From contig NW_025963890.1 of NCBI RefSeq assembly GCF_023055435.1, forward strand, positions 37,200,001-37,264,000: a stretch of 64,000 nucleotides of DNA. Reading direction: 5' to 3'. The notes below the pieces were generated by a model. It was given only the letters and a program-made list of their open reading frames with translations, was not told where the DNA came from and ran no database searches. Source of the stretch: Haliotis rufescens (taxonomy: Eukaryota). The position numbers and the translations under genes are program-made. Positions 4,524-20,169 of the stretch are shown here, in pieces (the stretch's first letter is position 1; every line of letters starts with the position of its first letter).

Positions 4524-4711
4524 TCAACCTTCTCCGCCACGACAGTGTCTTCGACGCCTGCACCGCTGTAACGAGTTACGACCGCTTCTACACCGGCGCC
4601 GCTTCCTGGTATCAGAGCCACGACCGTGAACTCTCCTTCTCCCGCGCTCCCTCCGCCGCTTCCTACCGTCACGCCACTTCCGCTTATGTCGCTTCCGGCG
4701 CCGACAGGAAT
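4524..4711 (-). CDS. RSPO: R-spondin exon 5: basic C-terminal tail (DSCRRRKRHKRKWRDGRKRRRERGRRR...RGGEG*)
   Basis: Acceptor ttgcAG at 4713-4712; phase 1 matches the TSP1 exon donor; Arg/Lys-rich tail typical of R-spondins; TGA at 4526-4524. Absent from the ORF track. Confidence 0.8.
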
Positions 4712-4729: not shown

Positions 4730-7700
4730 GGGTCAGCGGAACATATGTCAGGATATGACCACTAGTCAGCGGGACATATGTCTGTATATGAGCACTAGTC
4801 AGCGGGACATATGTCAGGATATGTCCACTAGTCAGCGGGACATATGTCAGTATATGAGCACTAGTCAGCGGGACATATGTCAGTATATGAGCCCTAGTCA
4901 GCGGGACATATGTCAGTATATGAGCACTAGTCAGCGGGACATATGTCAGGATATGACCACTAGTCAGCGGGACATATGTCAGTATATGAACAATAGTCAG
5001 CGGGACATATGTCAGTATATTGGCATTAGTCAGCGAGACAAATGTCAGTAAATAAGCACTAGTCAGCGGAACATATGTCAGTATATGGGCACTAGTCAGC
5101 AGGACATATGTCAGTATATGAGAACTAGTCAGCGGGACATATGTCAGTATATGAGCACTAGTCAGCGGGACATATGTCAGTATATGAGCACTAGTCAGCG
5201 GGACATATGTCAGTATATGAGCACTAGTCAGCGGGACATATGTCAGTATATGAGCACTAGTCAGCGGGACATATGTCAGTATATGAGCACTAGTCAGCGG
5301 GACATATGTCAGTATATGAGCACTAGTCAGCGGGACATATGTCAGGATATGACCACTAGTCAGCGGGACATATGTCAGTATATGAACACTAGTCAGCGGG
5401 ACATATGTCAGTATATGGGCATAAGTCAGCGAGATAAATGTAAGTAAATAAGCAATAGTCAGCGGGACATATGTCAGTATATGGGCACTAGTCAGCAGGA
5501 CATATGTCAGTATATGAGGACTAGTCAGCGGGACATATGTCAGTATATGAGCACTAGTCAGGGGGACATATGCCAGTATATGAGCACTAGTCAGCGGGCA
5601 TATGTCAGTATGTGAGCACTAGTCAGCGGGACATATGTCAGTATATGAGCACTAGTCAGCGGGACATATATCAGTATATGAGCACTAGTCAGCGGGACAT
5701 ATGTCAGTATGTGAGCACTAGTCAGCGGGACATATGTCAGTATATGAGCACTAGTCAGCGGGACATATGTCAGTATATGAGCACTAGTCAGCGGGACATA
5801 TGTCAGGATATGACCACTAGTCAGCGGGACATATGTCAGTATATGAACACTAGTCAGCGGGACAAATGTCAGTATATGGGCATAAGTCAGCGAGACAAAT
5901 GTCAGAAAATAAGCACTAGTCAGCGGGACAAATGTCAGTATATGGGCACTACTCAGCAGGACATATGTCAGTATATGAGGACTAGTCAGCGGGACATATG
6001 TCAGTATATGAGCACTAGTCAGGGGGACATATGTCAGTATATGAGCACTAGTCAGCGGGCATATGTCAGTATGTGAGCACTAGTCAGCGGGACATATGTC
6101 AGTATATGAGCACTAGTCAGCGGGACATATATCAGTATATGAGCACTAGTCAGCGGGACATATGTCAGTATGTGAGCACTAGTAAGCGGGACATATGTCA
6201 GTATATGAGCACTAGTCAGCGGGACATATGTCAGTATATGAGCACTAGTCAGCGGGACATATGTCAGGATATGACCACTAGTCAGCAGGACATATGTCAG
6301 TATATGAACACTAGTCAGCGGGACATATGTCAGTATATGGGCATTAGTCAGCGAGACAAATGTCAGTAAATAAGCACTAGTCAGCGGGACATATGTCAGT
6401 ATATGGGCACTAGTCAGCGGGACATATGTCAGTATGTGAGCACTAGTCAGCGGGACATACGTCAGTATATGAGCACTAGTCAGCGGGACATATGTGAGTA
6501 TATGAGCACTAGTCAGCGGGACATATGTCAGTATGTGAGCACTAGTCAGCGGGACATATGTCAGTATATGAGCACTAGTCAGCGGGACATATATCAGTAT
6601 ATGAGCACTAGTCGGCGGGACATATGTCAGTATATGAGCACTAGTCAGCGGGACATATGTCAGGGTATGACCACTAGTCAGCAGGACATATGTCAGTATA
6701 TGAGCGCTAGTCAGCGGGACATATGTCAGAATGTGAGCACTAGTCAGCGGGACATATGTCAGTATATGAGCACTAGTCAGCGGGACATATGTCAGTATAT
6801 GAGCACTAGTCAGCGGGACATATATCAGTATATGAGCACTAGTCAGCGGGACATATGTCAGTATGTGAGCACTAGTAAGCGGGACATATGTCAGTATATG
6901 AGCACTAGTCAGCGGGACATATGTCAGTATATGAGCACTAGTCAGCGGGACATATGTCAGGATATGACCACTAGTCAGCGGGACATATGTCAGTATATGA
7001 ACACTAGTCAGCGGGACATATGTCAGTATATGGGCATTAGTCAGCGAGACAAATGTCAGTAAATAAGCACTAGTCAGCGGGACATATGTCAGTATATGGG
7101 CACTAGTCAGCGGGACATATGTCAGTATATGAGGACTAGTCAGCGGGACATATGTCAGTATATGAGCACTAGTCAGCGGGACATATGTGAGTATATGAGC
7201 ACTAGTCAGCGGGACATATGTCAGTATGTGAGCACTAGTCAGGGGGACATATGTCAGTATATGAGCACTAGTCAGCGGGACATATATCAGTATATGAGCA
7301 CTAGTCGGCGGGACATATGTCAGTATATGAGCACTAGTCAGCGGGACATATGTCAGGATATGACCACTAGTCAGCAGGACATATGTCAGTATATGAGCGC
7401 TAGTCAGCGGGACATATGTCAGTATGTGAGCACTAGTCAGCGGGACATATGTCAGTATATGAGCCCAAGTCAGCAGGACATATGTCAGCATGTGAGCCCT
7501 AGTCAGCGGGACACATGTCAGTATATCAGCGTCAGCGGGACATATGTCAGTATATCAGCGCTAGTCAGCGGGACATATGTCAGTATATCAGCGTCAGCGG
7601 GACATATGTCAGTATATGAGGACTAGTCAGCGGGACATATGTCAGTATATCAGCGCTAGTCAGCGGGACACATGTCAGTATATCAGCGTCAGCGGGACAT

Positions 7701-9112: not shown

Positions 9113-9295
9113 CTCTGCAAGCTGCGCGCGCACCTTGGCATCCGCGTCGCTCTCGAAGAGGGGGACACGCTGTTCCCCCATTGGGTGATGGAGACTCTAG
9201 GATGCTCCTGGACCGGACTCGGAAGCGCCGTCGGCGTCCGCATCTACGTGGTCTGCATGCGCTCCACGCTGTCCACGGCCCTACGAGACAGTCCA
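9113..9295 (-). CDS. RSPO: R-spondin exon 4: thrombospondin type-1 domain
   Basis: VDCLVGPWTAWSAC...RSRSILESPSPNGGTACPPLRERRGC shows the WxxWxxC, RxR and CP motifs; acceptor at 9297-9296, donor GT at 9112-9111. Confidence 0.9.
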
Positions 9296-10202: not shown

Positions 10203-10352
10203 CTCTACTTCTACACTCAGACGAGTAGTTGGCGAGGTGCAGGCCGGTGGGGCAGGAGTCGATGCAGTCGCCCCTGTGGGCTATGCGTGGGCGGTAACAT
10301 CGCGTGCAGTACTGGCGTGTGAAGCAGGCCCGGCAGAAACTCACTTGACATT
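10203..10352 (-). CDS. RSPO: R-spondin exon 3: furin-like Cys-rich domain 2
   Basis: KCQVSFCRACFTRQYCTRC...GDCIDSCPTG...SSEC; ctcAG acceptor and gtgagt donor, phase 1/1. Confidence 0.92.
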
Positions 10353-10960: not shown

Positions 10961-11035
10961 GGCAGATATAGGTTAGCTTGAAATTATCTCCAGGTAGGTT
11001 TCCACTGATTCTCCTACCAGCAAGAGGCAACTTAC

Positions 11036-11227
11036 TGACGCATCTGTTGTGAAAGTGTTGGCGGACTCCGAAGTACCCTGGAGGACAGCTGGGCGTGCAC
11101 ATCCCCGTCTGGCGCATGTTCCGGCGGTACAGGAACAGGAAGTAACGTCTCTCGCATGTCACACAGCCGTTGACAGCGGAACACGACGTGCATCCGCGAG
11201 GACACATCGGATAGGGTCCGACCACAG
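11036..11227 (-). CDS. RSPO: R-spondin exon 2: furin-like Cys-rich domain 1
   Basis: CPRGCTSCSAVNGCVTC...FLFLYRRNMRQTGMCTPSCPPGYFG...NRC is the R-spondin FU1 signature; ttcAG acceptor and gtaagt donor. Confidence 0.95.
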
Positions 11228-15675: not shown

Positions 15676-16494
15676 ATTGTCAATTAAATCAAACTTTACA
15701 GAAAACTGTGTTTTGAGGATCTAAAAATATTTTCAACGATCCAATTGACAACGGTTATATTTATTCATATTCATTATTGCGTCGTACAGTCAACCACCTA
15801 TTTTGTTTGTTAGATTACAGGTAACTAATTCCGTTAGTTGTTTCAGTAGGGCATTGTACATACAGCCTTACAGATCAGAATGCACAGGCGAAGTCGCAAC
15901 AAACTCCTGTGTACAATCCTATGGCCTTGTCATGCCAGTCTGGTTCATGTGAGAATATTACCAGTCAAGATGATTTTGTAATGTAGTGTTTAAATTAGAG
16001 GGTTAATTGATCTTGATGTTAATAGAGTTTCTATGTGTGACCCTCCTACAAAGATTCATCACTGTAAGTAGGAAGTAGTGAAAAGTCAAAGTATTCATAA
16101 AAGCCAGAAATATTCCATGACACAGACGTGGGCTGTTTTAAAAAAGAGTACGGATCTTACACGTACTGAGAGCATACAGTCGAGGGGCCAGGCGTGCATG
16201 GTCGAACCACAGTGCACGTCGTGACTCATTTCTGAAATATCGGTTGAAACACTCAACTGGCGTTAACACTTAAGTGGTTTTAAAACTTGAACCTTGTATT
16301 CTGGATTTTGGGACGCAGAACTGTTTTAACCTTTTTATTATACTTTCTGAAACAATTTTAACACACAACCGAAGCAACATCACTGATACGACACCTAAAA
16401 TTTGTATTGACAATCGACCCAGAAAGAAAACTTAAAGGATTTCAGGGGTAGAGTTGGTCTCCAGCAGCATATGCTTGTCGGAAGACATAACATA

Positions 16495-18500
16495 TAAACC
16501 GAGATGTACTGACTTCATCTGACCTGACACCCCATATATATAGACATGTGCTGACTTCATCTGACCTGACACACCATGTAAACACGGATGTGCTGACTTC
16601 ATCTGACCTGACACAATATATACAGAGACGTGCTGACTTCATCTGACCTGACACCATATATACAGAGATGTCCTGGCTTCATCTGACCTGACACACCATA
16701 TATACAGAGATTTCCTGGCTTCATATGACCTGACACCATATATACAGAGATGTACTGACTTCATCTGACCTGACACACCATATATACAGAGATGTCCTGA
16801 CTTCATCTGACCTGACACACCATATATACAGAGACGTGCTGACTTCATCTGACCTGACACCATATATACAGATAAGTACTGACTTCATCTGACCTGACAC
16901 ACCATATATACAGAGATGTACTGACTTCATCTGACTTGACACTATATATATACAGAGATGTACTGACTTTATCTGACCTGACACCATATATATACAGAGA
17001 TGTACTGACTTCATCTGACCTGACACTATATATATACAGAGATGTACTGACTTCATCTGACCTGACACACCATATATACAGAGATTTCCTGGCTTCATCT
17101 GACCTGACACCTTATATATACAGAGATGTACTGACTTCATCTGACCTGACACAATATATACAGAGATGTACTGACTTCATCTGACCTGACACCATATATA
17201 CAGAGATGTACTGACTTCATCTGACCTGACACACCATATATACAGAGATATCCTGACTTCATCTGACCTAACACCATATATACAGAGACGTGCTGACTTC
17301 ATCTAACCTGACACCATATATACAGAGATGTCCTGGCTTCATCTGTCCTGACACACCATATATACAGAGATGTACTGACTTCATCTGACCTGACACACCA
17401 TATATACAGAGATTTCCTGGCTTCATCTGACCTGACACCATATATACAGAGATGTACTGACTTCATCTGACCTGACACACCATATATACAGAGATGTACT
17501 GACTTCATCTGACCTGACACACCATATATACAGAGATGTACTGACTTTATCTGACCTGACACCATATATATACAGAGATGTACTGACTTCATCTGACCTG
17601 ACACTATATATATACAGAGATGTACTGACTTCATCTGACCTGACACCATATATATACAGAGATGTACTGACTTCATCTGACCTGACACACCATATATACA
17701 GAGATGTACTGACTTCATCTGAGCTGACACTATATATATACAGAGATGTACTGACTTTATCTGACCTGACACTATATATATATACAGAGATGTACTGACT
17801 TCATCTGCCCTGACACTATATATATACAGAGATGTACTGACTTCATCTGACCTGACACACCATATATACAGAGATGTCCTGGCTTCATCTGACCTGACAC
17901 ACCATATATACAGGGACGTGCTGACTTCATCTGACCTGATACAATATATATACAGATATGTACTGACTTCATCTGATCTGACACAATATATATATATACA
18001 GAGATGTACTGACTTCATCTGACCTGACACAATATATATACAGAGATGTACTGACTTCATCTGACCTGACACACCATATATACAGAGATGTACTGACTTC
18101 ATCTGACCTGACACAATATATATACAGAGACGTACTGACTTCATCTGACCTGACACACCATATATACAGAGATGTACTGACTTCATCTGACCTGACACAC
18201 CATATATACAGAGATGTCCTGACTTCATCTGACCTGACACACCATATATACAGAGACGTGCTGACTTCATCTGACCTGACACCATATATACAGAGATGTA
18301 CCGACTTCATCTGACCTGACACCATATATACAGAGATGTCCTGACTTCATCTGATCTGACACAATATATATACAGAGATGTACTGACTTCATCTGATCTG
18401 ACACAATATATATATACAGAGATGTACTGACTTCATCTGATCTGACACATAAACAGAGATGTCCTGACTTCAACTGACCTGACACAATATATATACATAC
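16495..18500. repeat. ~40-46-bp minisatellite (gatgtactgacttcatctgacctgacacaccatatatacaga)
   Basis: Unit length varies through an internal (AT)n/(CA)n tract; the array abuts the exon 1 donor. Confidence 0.96.
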
Positions 18501-18514
18501 AGATATTTACTTAC

Positions 18515-19766
18515 TTCGCCTTGATCTAGCTTTTGGAGCGCCTGCCTTAAGGATGTTCGTAATTAGATCGCCCAGATCTGCAGGTCTCGCAGACTGGTGT
18601 GCAGTTGTAAATGTCCACGTTGGGTCTGCCATCATGTCTGTAAAAATGTCTTGGTCGACAACTATGTGTGTGTCTCTCCTCGCTCGGGGCAAAATCACTC
18701 TACTTGATTTAGACTTAACTTGGATCATTAGATGTCCCAAAGTCTGCCCCTCCTCTGCCACATGTCCCAGTGGTCCTGTCTGTACCTCCTGTACCAGATG
18801 TCCCACTGGGCCTGTCTGTTCCTCCTCTACAAGATGTCCCAGTGAGCTTATCTGTCCCTCCTCTACCAGATGTCCCAGTGAGCCTGTCTGCCCCTCCTGT
18901 TCCAGATGTCCCATTAGGCCTCTTTGTCTCTCCTCTATCAGATGTCCCAGTTGGCCTGTCTTTCCCTCCTCTACCAGATGTCCAAGTGGGCCTGTCTCTC
19001 CCTCCTGTACCAGATGTCCCAGTGGGCCTCTCTGTCCCTCGGCTACCAGATGTCCCAGTGGTTCTGTCTGTGCCTCCTGTACCAGATGTCCCAGTGGGCC
19101 TGTCTGCCTCTCCTCTACCAGATGTCTCAGTGGTCCTGTCTGTTCCCCCTGTACCAGATGTCCCAGTGGTCCTGTCTTCCCCCCCTCTACCAGATGTCCC
19201 AGTGGTCCTGTCTGCCCCTCCTCTACCAGATGTCCCAGTGGTCCCGTCTGTCCCTCCTCTACCAGATGTCCCAGTGGTCCCGTCTGCCCCTCCTCTACCA
19301 GATGTCCCAGTGGTCCTGTCTGCCCCTCCTCTACCAGATGTCCCAGTGGTCCTGTCTGCCCCTCCTCTACCAGATGTCCCAGTTGTCCTGTCTGTTCCTC
19401 CTGTACCAGATGTCCCAGTGGTCCTGTCTGTTCCTCCTCTACCAGATGTCCCAGTGGTCCTGTCTGTTCCTCCTGTACCAGATGTCCCAGTGGTCCTGTC
19501 TGTTCCTCCTCTACCAGATGTCCCAGTTGTCCTGTCTGTTCCTCCTCTACGAGATGTCCCAGTTGTCCTGTCTGCCCCTCCTCTACCAGATGTCCCAGTG
19601 GGCCTGTCTGTCCCTCCTCTACCAGATGTCCCAGTTGTCCTGTTTGTTCCTCCTGTACCAGATGGCCCAGTGGGCCTGTCTGTCCTTCTATTTCTAAAAG
19701 TCCCGATGTGTCTGTCTGTCCCAGAACGGTCAGATATACACACACGACAGCTAGAAGCAAGTGCAT
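18515..19766 (-). CDS. RSPO: R-spondin exon 1: signal peptide, ~26 x 12-aa acidic repeat (GQTGPLGHLVEE) and linker with RARR and RSRR sites
   Basis: ATG at 19766 followed by hydrophobic MHLLLAVVCVYLTVLG; the frame stays open for 417 codons to a strong A|gtaagt donor (18514) in phase 1, matching the FU1 exon. Confidence 0.72.
18730..19690. repeat. 36-bp coding minisatellite inside R-spondin exon 1
   Basis: Units such as ccagatgtcccagtggtcctgtctgcccctcctcta; no frame-breaking indels. Confidence 0.95.
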
Positions 19767-20169
19767 AACGAGGTCCTAGGATCACTCGCAGCCCATGGGT
19801 CGGGCTAAACACTCCTAGTTTCTCAGGGCATTTACTTCTCTTCAAACTCCAAACAGGTACGCTAGGCACATCACGGTTATGACATCAACTGTAGCGTGTG
19901 AAATGATACACTAGTCGTACACATAATCACCCTCAGCTTCACGGCTCTAAGTGCGCCAGCAGGGAGGTCGGCCCACCAGATTGACTGTGACAGCCCGCAT
20001 ACCCGACTAACGTCGTCACTCTTGCTTTTAGCATTTTCCACATAAGACATATTTATAATCGACACATCTTTCATGCACGATCGCAGATGGGATAACTCGA
20101 ACCTTGTCCCGTATTTAAAGGTAAGACAATTGGTTACAGGCAGTATGAGTGGAGGTATGTTGAGGGTTA

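What the first reader, a model, noticed from the sequence alone, without database searches (positions are those of the whole stretch)
18515..19766. R-spondin with a giant acidic His/Glu tandem-repeat pro-region bounded by furin sites
Seen: exon 1 encodes a signal peptide, ~26 copies of (G/E)QTGPLGHLV(E/Q)E, then PRARR (~18686-18675), a ~50-aa spacer and KARSRR. It ends exactly at a phase-1 gtaagt donor that splices in frame onto the FU1 exon. The 36-bp array has no frameshifting indels, unlike the neighbouring non-coding arrays. Known: characterised R-spondins are only ~230-270 aa, with a short N-terminus before FU1, and bind heparan sulfate through TSP1 and the basic tail. Inference: the ~310-aa polyanionic repeat could be a removable latency or chaperone domain. 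It would neutralise the very Arg-rich TSP1 and tail, keeping a Wnt potentiator soluble or inactive until furin cleavage. The regular His+Glu spacing may bind metal ions, and the repeated PLG-HL resembles MMP-sensitive sequences. This would be an undescribed mode of RSPO/Wnt control, with VNTR-type allelic length variation.
Basis: partly seen in the sequence, partly recalled or inferred. Interest (0 to 1): 0.85.

Follow-up and report, generated by a model that had tools for sequence, protein, structure and literature searches.

The report
Abalone R-spondin with repeat-expanded N-terminal pro-segment
The first coding exon of the only R-spondin (Wnt-enhancer) gene found in this abalone-like genome carries a transcribed, in-frame 26-copy 36-bp repeat between the signal peptide and a conserved furin-type motif, but nothing yet shows that this long extra segment does more than get cut off.

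Summary
On the minus strand, ATG 19766 opens a 417-codon frame. It encodes a signal peptide, 26 in-register 36-bp units (GQTGPLGHLVEE), a 78-aa unique linker with RARR and RSRR, and a phase-1 gtaagt donor at 18514.

RNA-derived contigs from four public runs (three studies, two species) end exactly at 18515. They continue with the first 30 bases of the FU1 exon at 11227. The intron has no coverage, and no contig skips the array.

The annotated Haliotis asinina orthologue (509 aa) has the same layout with about 14 degenerate units. Other mollusc, annelid and nemertean R-spondins found are 219-329 aa. Those with an N-terminus place an R-x-K/R-R motif about 10 aa after the signal peptide, directly before FU1.

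So this is a Haliotis-specific coding minisatellite in a probable pro-segment. The latency and polyanion idea is not supported as a conserved function:
- Net charge of the repeats is -45 here but -5 in H. asinina.
- His and PLG positions are not conserved.
- Variation among units and between species looks near neutral.
- Non-coding 36-bp arrays without indels are common in this genome.

Cleavage is inferred, not shown. It is a new variant of a known kind. The scan had not noted this feature on other DNA.

The parts
19767..19966 (-). 5' UTR; the transcript start lies at or upstream of about 19966
   Evidence: RNA contigs reach 19889, 19938, 19966 and 19965 in runs X1, X3, X6 and X9, with zero depth beyond 19996. 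Sequence.
19719..19766 (-). Start codon and signal peptide MHLLLAVVCVYLTVLG (residues 1-16)
   Evidence: It is 15/16 identical to the H. asinina orthologue and aligns with the signal peptides of other gastropod R-spondins. The cleavage point after G16 is inferred from the -3/-1 rule; no predictor was run.
18750..19685 (-). 26 in-register 36-bp units encoding (G/E)QTGPLGHLV(E/Q)E. The 5' and central units are nearly identical; the 3' units are degenerate.
   Evidence: TRF, unit table. RNA contig X1 runs unbroken over 18515-19102, and short unitigs cover most of the rest, with no joints.
18516..18749 (-). Unique linker (78 aa), 49% identical to H. asinina
   Evidence: It is single copy in the genome. 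A sister species carries a 15-nt in-frame deletion at 18645.
18675..18686 (-). First furin-type motif R-A-R-R (residues 361-364), followed by D-T-H-I-V
   Evidence: H. asinina has R-G-K-R-D-T-Y-I-V at the aligned place.
18516..18527 (-). Second furin-type motif R-S-R-R (residues 414-417) at the end of exon 1
   Evidence: R-x-K/R-R is invariant before T-[IV]-[IV]-G-x-Y-P-x-C-P-R-G-C in the mollusc and annelid R-spondins aligned. It is also seen in nemertean, chiton, scallop, Gigantopelta and Patella sequences. It aligns with RSKR 28-31 of R-spondin-2 in PDB 8xft.
18509..18514 (-). Phase-1 splice donor gtaagt
   Evidence: Contigs of four runs stop at 18515 and continue with exon 2.
11036..11227 (-). 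Exon 2, FU1
   Evidence: Pfam Furin-like_2 E=1e-18. Human R-spondin-1 FU1 E=1e-17. 61/63 identical to H. asinina.
10203..10352 (-). Exon 3, FU2
   Evidence: Pfam Furin-like_2, profile positions 57-102, E=2e-8. 46/49 identical to H. asinina.
9113..9295 (-). Exon 4, TSP1
   Evidence: Pfam TSP1_spondin E=3e-10, 40.6 bits against a cut-off of 41, on the exon piece alone. 54 identities over 62 aligned columns with H. asinina.
4524..4711 (-). Exon 5, basic tail and stop codon
   Evidence: 32 of 61 residues are Arg or Lys, counted by hand from the translation printed, not by a script. 51/60 identical to H. asinina.

Best explanation
This is the true first coding exon of the single R-spondin gene found in an abalone (Haliotis) genome. 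A 36-bp minisatellite has expanded in frame between the signal peptide and the basic R-x-K/R-R motif that directly precedes FU1 in spiralian R-spondins. The whole exon is transcribed, kept in the mRNA and spliced to FU1 (shown). It adds about 400 residues of fast-evolving sequence with no confidently predicted fold. Inferred: this segment is a pro-segment that furin-type convertases remove in the secretory pathway, at RSRR417 and perhaps RARR364, releasing a normal-sized R-spondin. Because it is discarded, only its reading frame is under selection. A frameshift would destroy the only R-spondin gene found. The array can therefore grow, shrink and homogenise like any minisatellite of this genome. 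That explains why unit sequence, number and charge differ so much between Haliotis species.
For: Gene model: five exons, all introns phase 1. Domains. RNA: contigs of X1, X3 and X6 (organism A) and X9 (organism B) end at 18515 and run on with the reverse complement of 11227-11198. Depth in the intron 18457-18513 is zero and no joints lie inside the array. No retrocopy: FU1 and the linker each match one place in the 1.33-Gb genome. Orthologue: H. asinina XP_067679447.1 (509 aa) has the same signal peptide, about 14 degenerate 12-aa units, the linker and both basic motifs. Lineage-specific: 22 other spiralian R-spondins plus one amphioxus R-spondin are 189-329 aa, including Gigantopelta, Patella and Lottia. 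Conserved R-x-K/R-R before FU1. Relaxed constraint: linker 49% identical against 94-97% for FU1 and FU2. Unit variants are 8 synonymous to 24 non-synonymous, against 30 of 108 possible changes being synonymous. The sister species shows 5 synonymous to 11 non-synonymous differences in exon 1 plus an in-frame 15-nt deletion, while its two visible changes in exon 2 are silent. Minisatellite background: non-coding 36-bp arrays with 0% indels elsewhere.
Against: Cleavage at either motif has not been shown for any R-spondin in what I could search. The basic motif could instead serve heparan-sulfate binding or secretion. Islands of conservation in the linker (GHLMI.VK.KSS, R..RDT.IV, NMMA.P.W, ILK) and the recurring L-G-x-L-V-E pattern in the degenerate H. 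asinina units hint at some constraint beyond reading frame. The middle of the array is covered only by short unitigs, so minor isoforms with fewer units cannot be excluded.
Confidence: 0.55

Rival explanations
1. The acidic His/Glu repeat is a functional latency or chaperone domain. It masks the Arg-rich TSP1 domain and tail, or keeps the protein soluble, until furin cleavage. This would make a regulated pro-R-spondin.
For: Net charge of the repeats is -45, against about +52 for the mature part in this species. Two furin-type motifs are conserved in two Haliotis species. The segment has persisted in at least three Haliotis species. This is the only R-spondin gene found.
Against: The H. asinina repeats have net charge -5 and its whole pro-region +1, with an equally basic mature part of +56. 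Its units include basic ones such as GHRGQTGRRVED. His and P-L-G positions are not conserved. The substitution pattern is near neutral. No confident fold is predicted, pLDDT 48.9. Other spiralian R-spondins have equally basic tails without such a domain.
Confidence: 0.17
2. The segment is not removed. Mature abalone R-spondin carries a long flexible N-terminal extension next to FU1, the ZNRF3/RNF43-binding side. The R-x-K/R-R motifs are basic patches, not cleavage sites.
For: No evidence of convertase processing of R-spondins turned up in the literature searches. Vertebrate R-spondin-2 keeps RSKR at the same place. From memory only, vertebrate R-spondins are usually described as starting right after the signal peptide.
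Against: R-x-K/R-R followed by Thr is invariant across the phyla aligned and recurs in most sequences, and it fits the furin consensus. A second such motif is conserved inside the fast-evolving Haliotis linker, where little else is conserved.
Confidence: 0.22
3. The array is not translated. It is spliced out, or another first exon is used, or the ORF is a chance product of a minisatellite.
For: The array is open in 5 of 6 frames. Intrinsic coding tests are uninformative. A 33-bp intronic array abutting exon 5 is also open in that exon's frame, yet it is absent from the orthologous protein. Contigs cannot exclude rare isoforms.
Against: Contigs run unbroken from the donor through the linker into about 10 units. 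They also run from the 5' UTR through the ATG into the first units, with no joints, in four runs. The orthologous model in H. asinina includes the repeats. No other signal peptide is available in the linker.
Confidence: 0.04

Closest known systems
R-spondins (RSPO1-4 of vertebrates; single 'R-spondin-2-like' genes of molluscs, annelids, nemerteans)
   Same: Signal peptide, FU1, FU2, TSP1 and an Arg/Lys-rich tail. One domain per exon, with phase-1 introns. A basic R-x-K/R-R motif at the end of the first coding exon.
   Different: About 400 residues instead of about 10 lie between the signal peptide and the basic motif. These comprise 26 tandem 12-aa units plus a 78-aa linker with a second basic motif.
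Haliotis asinina XP_067679447.1, 'uncharacterized protein isoform X1' (automatic NCBI annotation)
   Same: Same architecture and the same gene. FU1 is 61/63 identical, the signal peptide 15/16, and both basic motifs are present.
   Different: About 14 degenerate units, with signs of a three-unit higher-order repeat, instead of 26 homogeneous ones. The repeat region is nearly uncharged instead of strongly acidic. There are 11 extra residues between FU1 and FU2.
Convertase-processed growth-factor precursors (TGF-beta/BMP, NGF pro-domains)
   Same: Signal peptide, then a long N-terminal segment, then R-x-K/R-R, then a compact Cys-rich signalling domain. This is a resemblance in layout only.
   Different: Those pro-domains are folded, conserved and needed for folding or latency. 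Here the segment is repetitive, fast-evolving and has no confident predicted fold. Cleavage is not shown.
Coding minisatellites (VNTRs in exons of secreted proteins)
   Same: The unit length is a multiple of three. Expansion is by whole units, the array edges are degenerate and the centre homogeneous. The array differs between related species.
   Different: It sits in the pro-segment of a conserved developmental signalling ligand. Length polymorphism within the species was not tested.

Membership tests
R-spondin | Two furin-like cysteine-rich repeats (FU1, FU2) | tested here: met
   Pfam PF15913, E=1e-18 (profile positions 2-55) and 2e-8 (57-102) on exons 2 and 3. PDB R-spondin-1 E=1e-17.
R-spondin | One spondin-type TSP1 domain after FU2 | tested here: met
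   PF19028, E=3e-10 and 40.6 bits, which is 0.4 below the curated cut-off, on the exon piece without its junction residues. The orthologue carries PF19028 and aligns through the TSP1 domain of R-spondin-2.
R-spondin | N-terminal signal peptide and basic C-terminal tail | tested here: met
   The hydrophobic N-terminus aligns with those of other R-spondins. 32 of 61 tail residues are R or K, a hand count from the translation printed. No signal-peptide predictor was available.
R-spondin | Receptor-binding residues (ZNRF3/RNF43 site in FU1, LGR site in FU2) and Wnt potentiation | not testable with these tools
   The alignments show the R..Q of ...RRNMRQTG... and the first Phe of CF..(Y)C kept. Activity needs an assay.
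Furin/proprotein-convertase-processed precursor | R-X-K/R-R motif after the signal peptide, ahead of the mature domain | tested here: met
   RARR 361-364 and RSRR 414-417. Conserved in H. asinina and, for the second motif, across Spiralia.
Furin/proprotein-convertase-processed precursor | Actual cleavage at the motif | not testable with these tools
   No protein data. Literature searches found no report for R-spondins.
Collagen (Pfam PF01391 hit) | Long uninterrupted Gly-X-Y triplets | tested here: not met
   The Pfam hit has E=4e-9 on residues 244-298. However, each 12-aa unit has at most three G-x-x triplets and then V-E-E, and 8 of 26 units start with E instead of G. This is a compositional match only.
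Coding minisatellite / VNTR | Tandem units with length divisible by 3, retained in the mature mRNA | tested here: met
   36 bp x 26.2 copies, 0% indels. The array is present in spliced RNA contigs.
Coding minisatellite / VNTR | Copy-number variation among individuals | not tested

The most novel reading that the evidence does not exclude
Spiralian R-spondins, and perhaps R-spondin-2 of vertebrates, are made as pro-proteins that must be cut at the conserved R-x-K/R-R motif before FU1. In abalones the pro-piece has grown into a roughly 400-aa acidic repeat that keeps the ligand latent or soluble until convertase cleavage. This would add a proteolytic switch to Wnt potentiation.
Probability: 0.15. 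Interest if true: 0.7.

Novelty: new variant of a known kind. Interest (0 to 1): 0.42.

Why it matters
R-spondins are described as small secreted Wnt enhancers whose N-terminus starts almost at FU1. Here the only R-spondin gene found in an abalone genome encodes a precursor about 2.5 times the usual size. The extra part sits exactly between the signal peptide and a furin-type motif. That motif is conserved across spiralian phyla and aligned with RSKR of R-spondin-2.

This makes one question directly testable: are R-spondins processed by convertases at this motif? In abalone the cut and uncut forms would differ by about 40 kDa, so a simple blot would answer it.

The case also shows how a genome rich in minisatellites can insert one into an essential developmental gene without harm. 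For annotation it is a caution, because the NCBI orthologue is labelled only 'uncharacterized protein'. A 2025 survey of 1,496 R-spondins has no occurrence of 'Haliotis' or 'cleavage' and, in the passages I read, no N-terminal repeat extension.

Tried and rejected
1. Intrinsic coding tests on the array (codon-position spread 11/12/9; 8 synonymous to 24 non-synonymous; absence of stops, P about 0.16 by chance) do not separate coding from non-coding.
No dN/dS was possible between the two species, and its repeat DNA was not inspected.
3. AlphaFold2 on the exon-1 protein alone gave mean pLDDT 48.9 and pTM 0.18, so no fold search was made.
4. The exhaustive profile search with the exon-1 protein gave only H. 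asinina as a true relative. The stronger hits are long uncharacterised proteins of a locust, a crayfish and a tunicate. I take them for periodic low-complexity look-alikes on score pattern and taxa alone; their sequences were not inspected.
5. The Pfam Collagen hit was rejected.
6. The 67-70% DNA match on contig C24 is an unrelated 36-bp minisatellite.
7. An internal acceptor before RARR and cryptic donor/acceptor pairs in the units were considered by eye. No contig uses them.
8. Exons were searched one by one by reference. The only sum over exons was a residue count for net charge.
10. No signal-peptide or ProP-type predictor is on hand.

Full report
**What is in the sequence**

On the minus strand an ATG at 19766 opens a frame of 419 codons that ends at 18507. 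The text reads as follows:
- MHLLLAVVCVYLTVLG, a typical hydrophobic signal sequence.
- Eleven residues.
- 26 units of 36 bp, all in register, with consensus GQTGPLGHLVEE.
- A 78-residue unique linker.

Tandem Repeats Finder gives period 36 at 18742-19685, 26.2 copies, 88% matches and no indels. PRARR is at 18689-18675 and KARSRR at 18533-18516. The base after the last Arg codon is followed by gtaagt, with the donor at 18514 in phase 1.

**The rest of the gene**

Four more exons follow downstream on the same strand. Each begins after an AG and ends before a GT, and all introns are phase 1.

| Exon | Coordinates | Domain | Evidence |
|---|---|---|---|
| 2 | 11227-11036 | FU1 | Pfam Furin-like_2 E=1e-18; human R-spondin-1 in the PDB E=1e-17 |
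| 3 | 10352-10203 | FU2 | second half of the same Pfam profile, E=2e-8 |
| 4 | 9295-9113 | TSP1 | TSP1_spondin E=3e-10 |
| 5 | 4711-4524 | basic tail | 32 of 61 residues Arg or Lys (hand count) |

The FU1 exon and the linker each occur once in the 1.33-Gb assembly. This is therefore the only R-spondin gene that the search found.

Every search was by exon, by reference.

**Is the long ORF more than chance?**

From the sequence alone the case is weak:
- The array is open in five of six frames.
- Among the 26 units there are 32 distinct variants, spread evenly over codon positions (11, 12, 9). They are 8 synonymous to 24 non-synonymous, which is the neutral expectation (30 of 108 possible changes are synonymous). 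Seeing no stop has a chance probability of about 0.16.
- Arrays without indels are not special. The 35-bp, 48-bp and 13-bp arrays nearby also have 0% indels.
- The genome holds many other 36-bp arrays with 0% indels that carry a stop in every unit of the matching frame, or give meaningless 400-aa ORFs.
- Inside this same gene, a 33-bp array in intron 4 (4732 onward) is open for about 300 codons in the frame of exon 5. It is nevertheless absent from the orthologous protein.

**RNA evidence**

The search for runs returned eight small contig sets of one organism holding 49-58% of the sampled words of 18498-19900. It also returned sets of related organisms holding 21-30%.

I laid the contigs of X1, X3 and X6 (organism A, two studies) and X9 (organism B) on 18400-20100:
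- In all four runs one contig ends exactly at 18515 and continues with 30 letters whose reverse complement equals 11227-11198, the start of the FU1 exon.
- Depth in the intron 18457-18513 is zero, so the material is spliced RNA. A retrocopy is excluded by the single-copy result.
- The X1 contig (1,435 nt) runs unbroken from 18515 to 19102, through the linker and about ten units.
- Other contigs run from the 5' UTR (up to 19966) through the ATG into the first units.
- The homogeneous centre is covered by short unitigs, as expected for short-read graphs.
- No joint skipping any part of the array was reported.

Contigs cannot count units or exclude rare isoforms.

**Comparative evidence**

The word-indexed protein search with the exon-1 protein found one true relative. 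It is XP_067679447.1 of Haliotis asinina, 509 aa, annotated 'uncharacterized protein isoform X1', with Furin-like_2 and TSP1_spondin domains. It has these features:
- The same signal peptide (15/16 identical).
- About 14 degenerate 12-residue units, one of them 13 residues long.
- The linker, 38/77 identical.
- RGKR where the window has RARR, and RTRR where it has RSRR.
- FU1 at 61/63 identical.

The window therefore comes from another Haliotis species. This is an inference, because organism names were coded.

Organism B shares the array and the junction. It carries a 15-nt in-frame deletion in the linker.

The other R-spondins found are 189-329 aa. They come from Babylonia, Nucella, Pomacea, Littorina, Elysia, Aplysia, Lymnaea, Biomphalaria, Bradybaena, Gigantopelta, Patella, Lottia, a chiton, a scallop, an annelid, a nemertean and amphioxus. 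Where an N-terminus is present, they have a signal peptide, about ten residues, and then R-x-K/R-R directly before T-[IV]-[IV]-G-x-Y-P-x-C-P-R-G-C. The two Arg are invariant in the alignment. The motif is also seen in Gigantopelta, Patella, chiton, scallop and nemertean, but not in amphioxus. It aligns with RSKR 28-31 of R-spondin-2 in PDB entry 8xft.

The extension is thus a Haliotis-specific insertion between two conserved landmarks.

**How it most likely works**

Shown: the precursor mRNA encodes about 400 extra residues ahead of a furin-type motif that long predates them.

Inferred: the motif is a convertase site and the extra residues are a pro-segment removed before or at secretion. What is under selection is only the reading frame, because a frameshift would destroy the sole R-spondin gene found. 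This accounts for the near-neutral pattern:
- The linker is 49% identical, against 94-97% for FU1 and FU2.
- Organism B differs by 5 synonymous and 11 non-synonymous changes in exon 1. Its two visible changes in exon 2 are silent.
- The arrays are homogenised independently. There are 26 near-identical acidic units here. H. asinina has about 14 divergent units that look like a three-unit higher-order repeat.

Its central feature is not conserved:
- Net charge of the repeats is -45 here but -5 in H. asinina. The whole H. asinina pro-region is +1, while the mature parts are equally basic, +52 and +56.
- The regular His and the P-L-G-H-L motif are present in only a minority of H. asinina units.
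- AlphaFold2 gives no confident fold (pLDDT 48.9).

A species-specific role cannot be excluded. Small conserved islands in the linker and the recurring L-G-x-L-V-E pattern leave room for some function. I give the regulated-latency reading about 0.15-0.2. I give about 0.2 to the reading that the segment stays attached.

**Comparison with what is known**

By every domain test that could be run, the gene is a member of the R-spondin family. The pro-segment has no known counterpart in that family:
- A survey of 1,496 R-spondins in 430 species has no occurrence of 'Haliotis' or 'cleavage', and the passages I read describe no N-terminal repeat extension.
- Three full-text searches found no report of convertase processing of R-spondins or of an abalone R-spondin.
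- The only prior trace is the automatic, unnamed NCBI model.

I therefore class it as a new variant of a known kind. Interest is moderate. The most probable reading is a tolerated coding minisatellite. It does, however, make the question of R-spondin N-terminal processing easy to test.

**Limits**

- The single read-laying run used contigs, not raw reads. Expression level, exact transcript start, unit number in the mRNA and length polymorphism therefore remain open.
The scan had no note of this feature on other DNA.

Noticed in passing
G000 C24:30109958-30111054 (L002); C1:26255853-26259108 (L009); C605:17477045-17479365 (L010): The genome carries many non-coding minisatellites of exactly 36-bp period with 0% indels (33, 90 and 64 copies). 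Some give 400-aa chance ORFs, others a stop in every unit. 145 places match the translated R-spondin array at E<=0.001.
   Followed up: partly
window 4732-6000 (intron 4, minus-strand gene): A 33-bp array (38+ copies, 0% indels) abuts the acceptor of exon 5. It is open for about 300 codons in the frame of exon 5, yet has no counterpart in the H. asinina protein. It is an internal example that an array in frame with a real exon need not be coding.
   Followed up: partly
window 11003-11035 (minus strand, just after the FU1 exon): Reading through the FU1 donor stays open (SKLPLAGRRI) up to a second phase-1 GT (a|gtggaa). H. asinina isoform X1 carries the matching 11 extra residues SMLPLARRKII between FU1 and FU2, which R-spondin-1 and -2 lack. 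This may be a conserved alternative 5' splice site. It was not checked with reads.
   Followed up: no
window 16484-18497: A 42-bp array of 48 copies begins only 17 bp downstream of the exon-1 donor. RNA contigs show no depth over 18457-18513, the only part of it that was laid.
   Followed up: partly
window 19832-19824 and 19796-19782 (minus strand, 5' UTR): Two very short upstream ORFs (ATG CCC TGA and ATG GGC TGC GAG TGA) lie inside the transcribed 5' UTR.
   Followed up: no
P0004-P0009, P0164, P0166, P0167, P0169, P0171 (alignment A1): R-x-K/R-R followed by Thr directly before the first FU1 cysteine motif is kept in mollusc, annelid and nemertean R-spondins and aligns with RSKR of R-spondin-2. 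It is absent from the amphioxus sequence P0170.
   Followed up: partly
window 18562, 18761, 19644, 19807: At these places all four RNA contig sets agree with each other and differ from the assembly. For example, 18562 A>C changes Ile402 to Ser. These are either alleles of the assembled individual or consensus errors.
   Followed up: no
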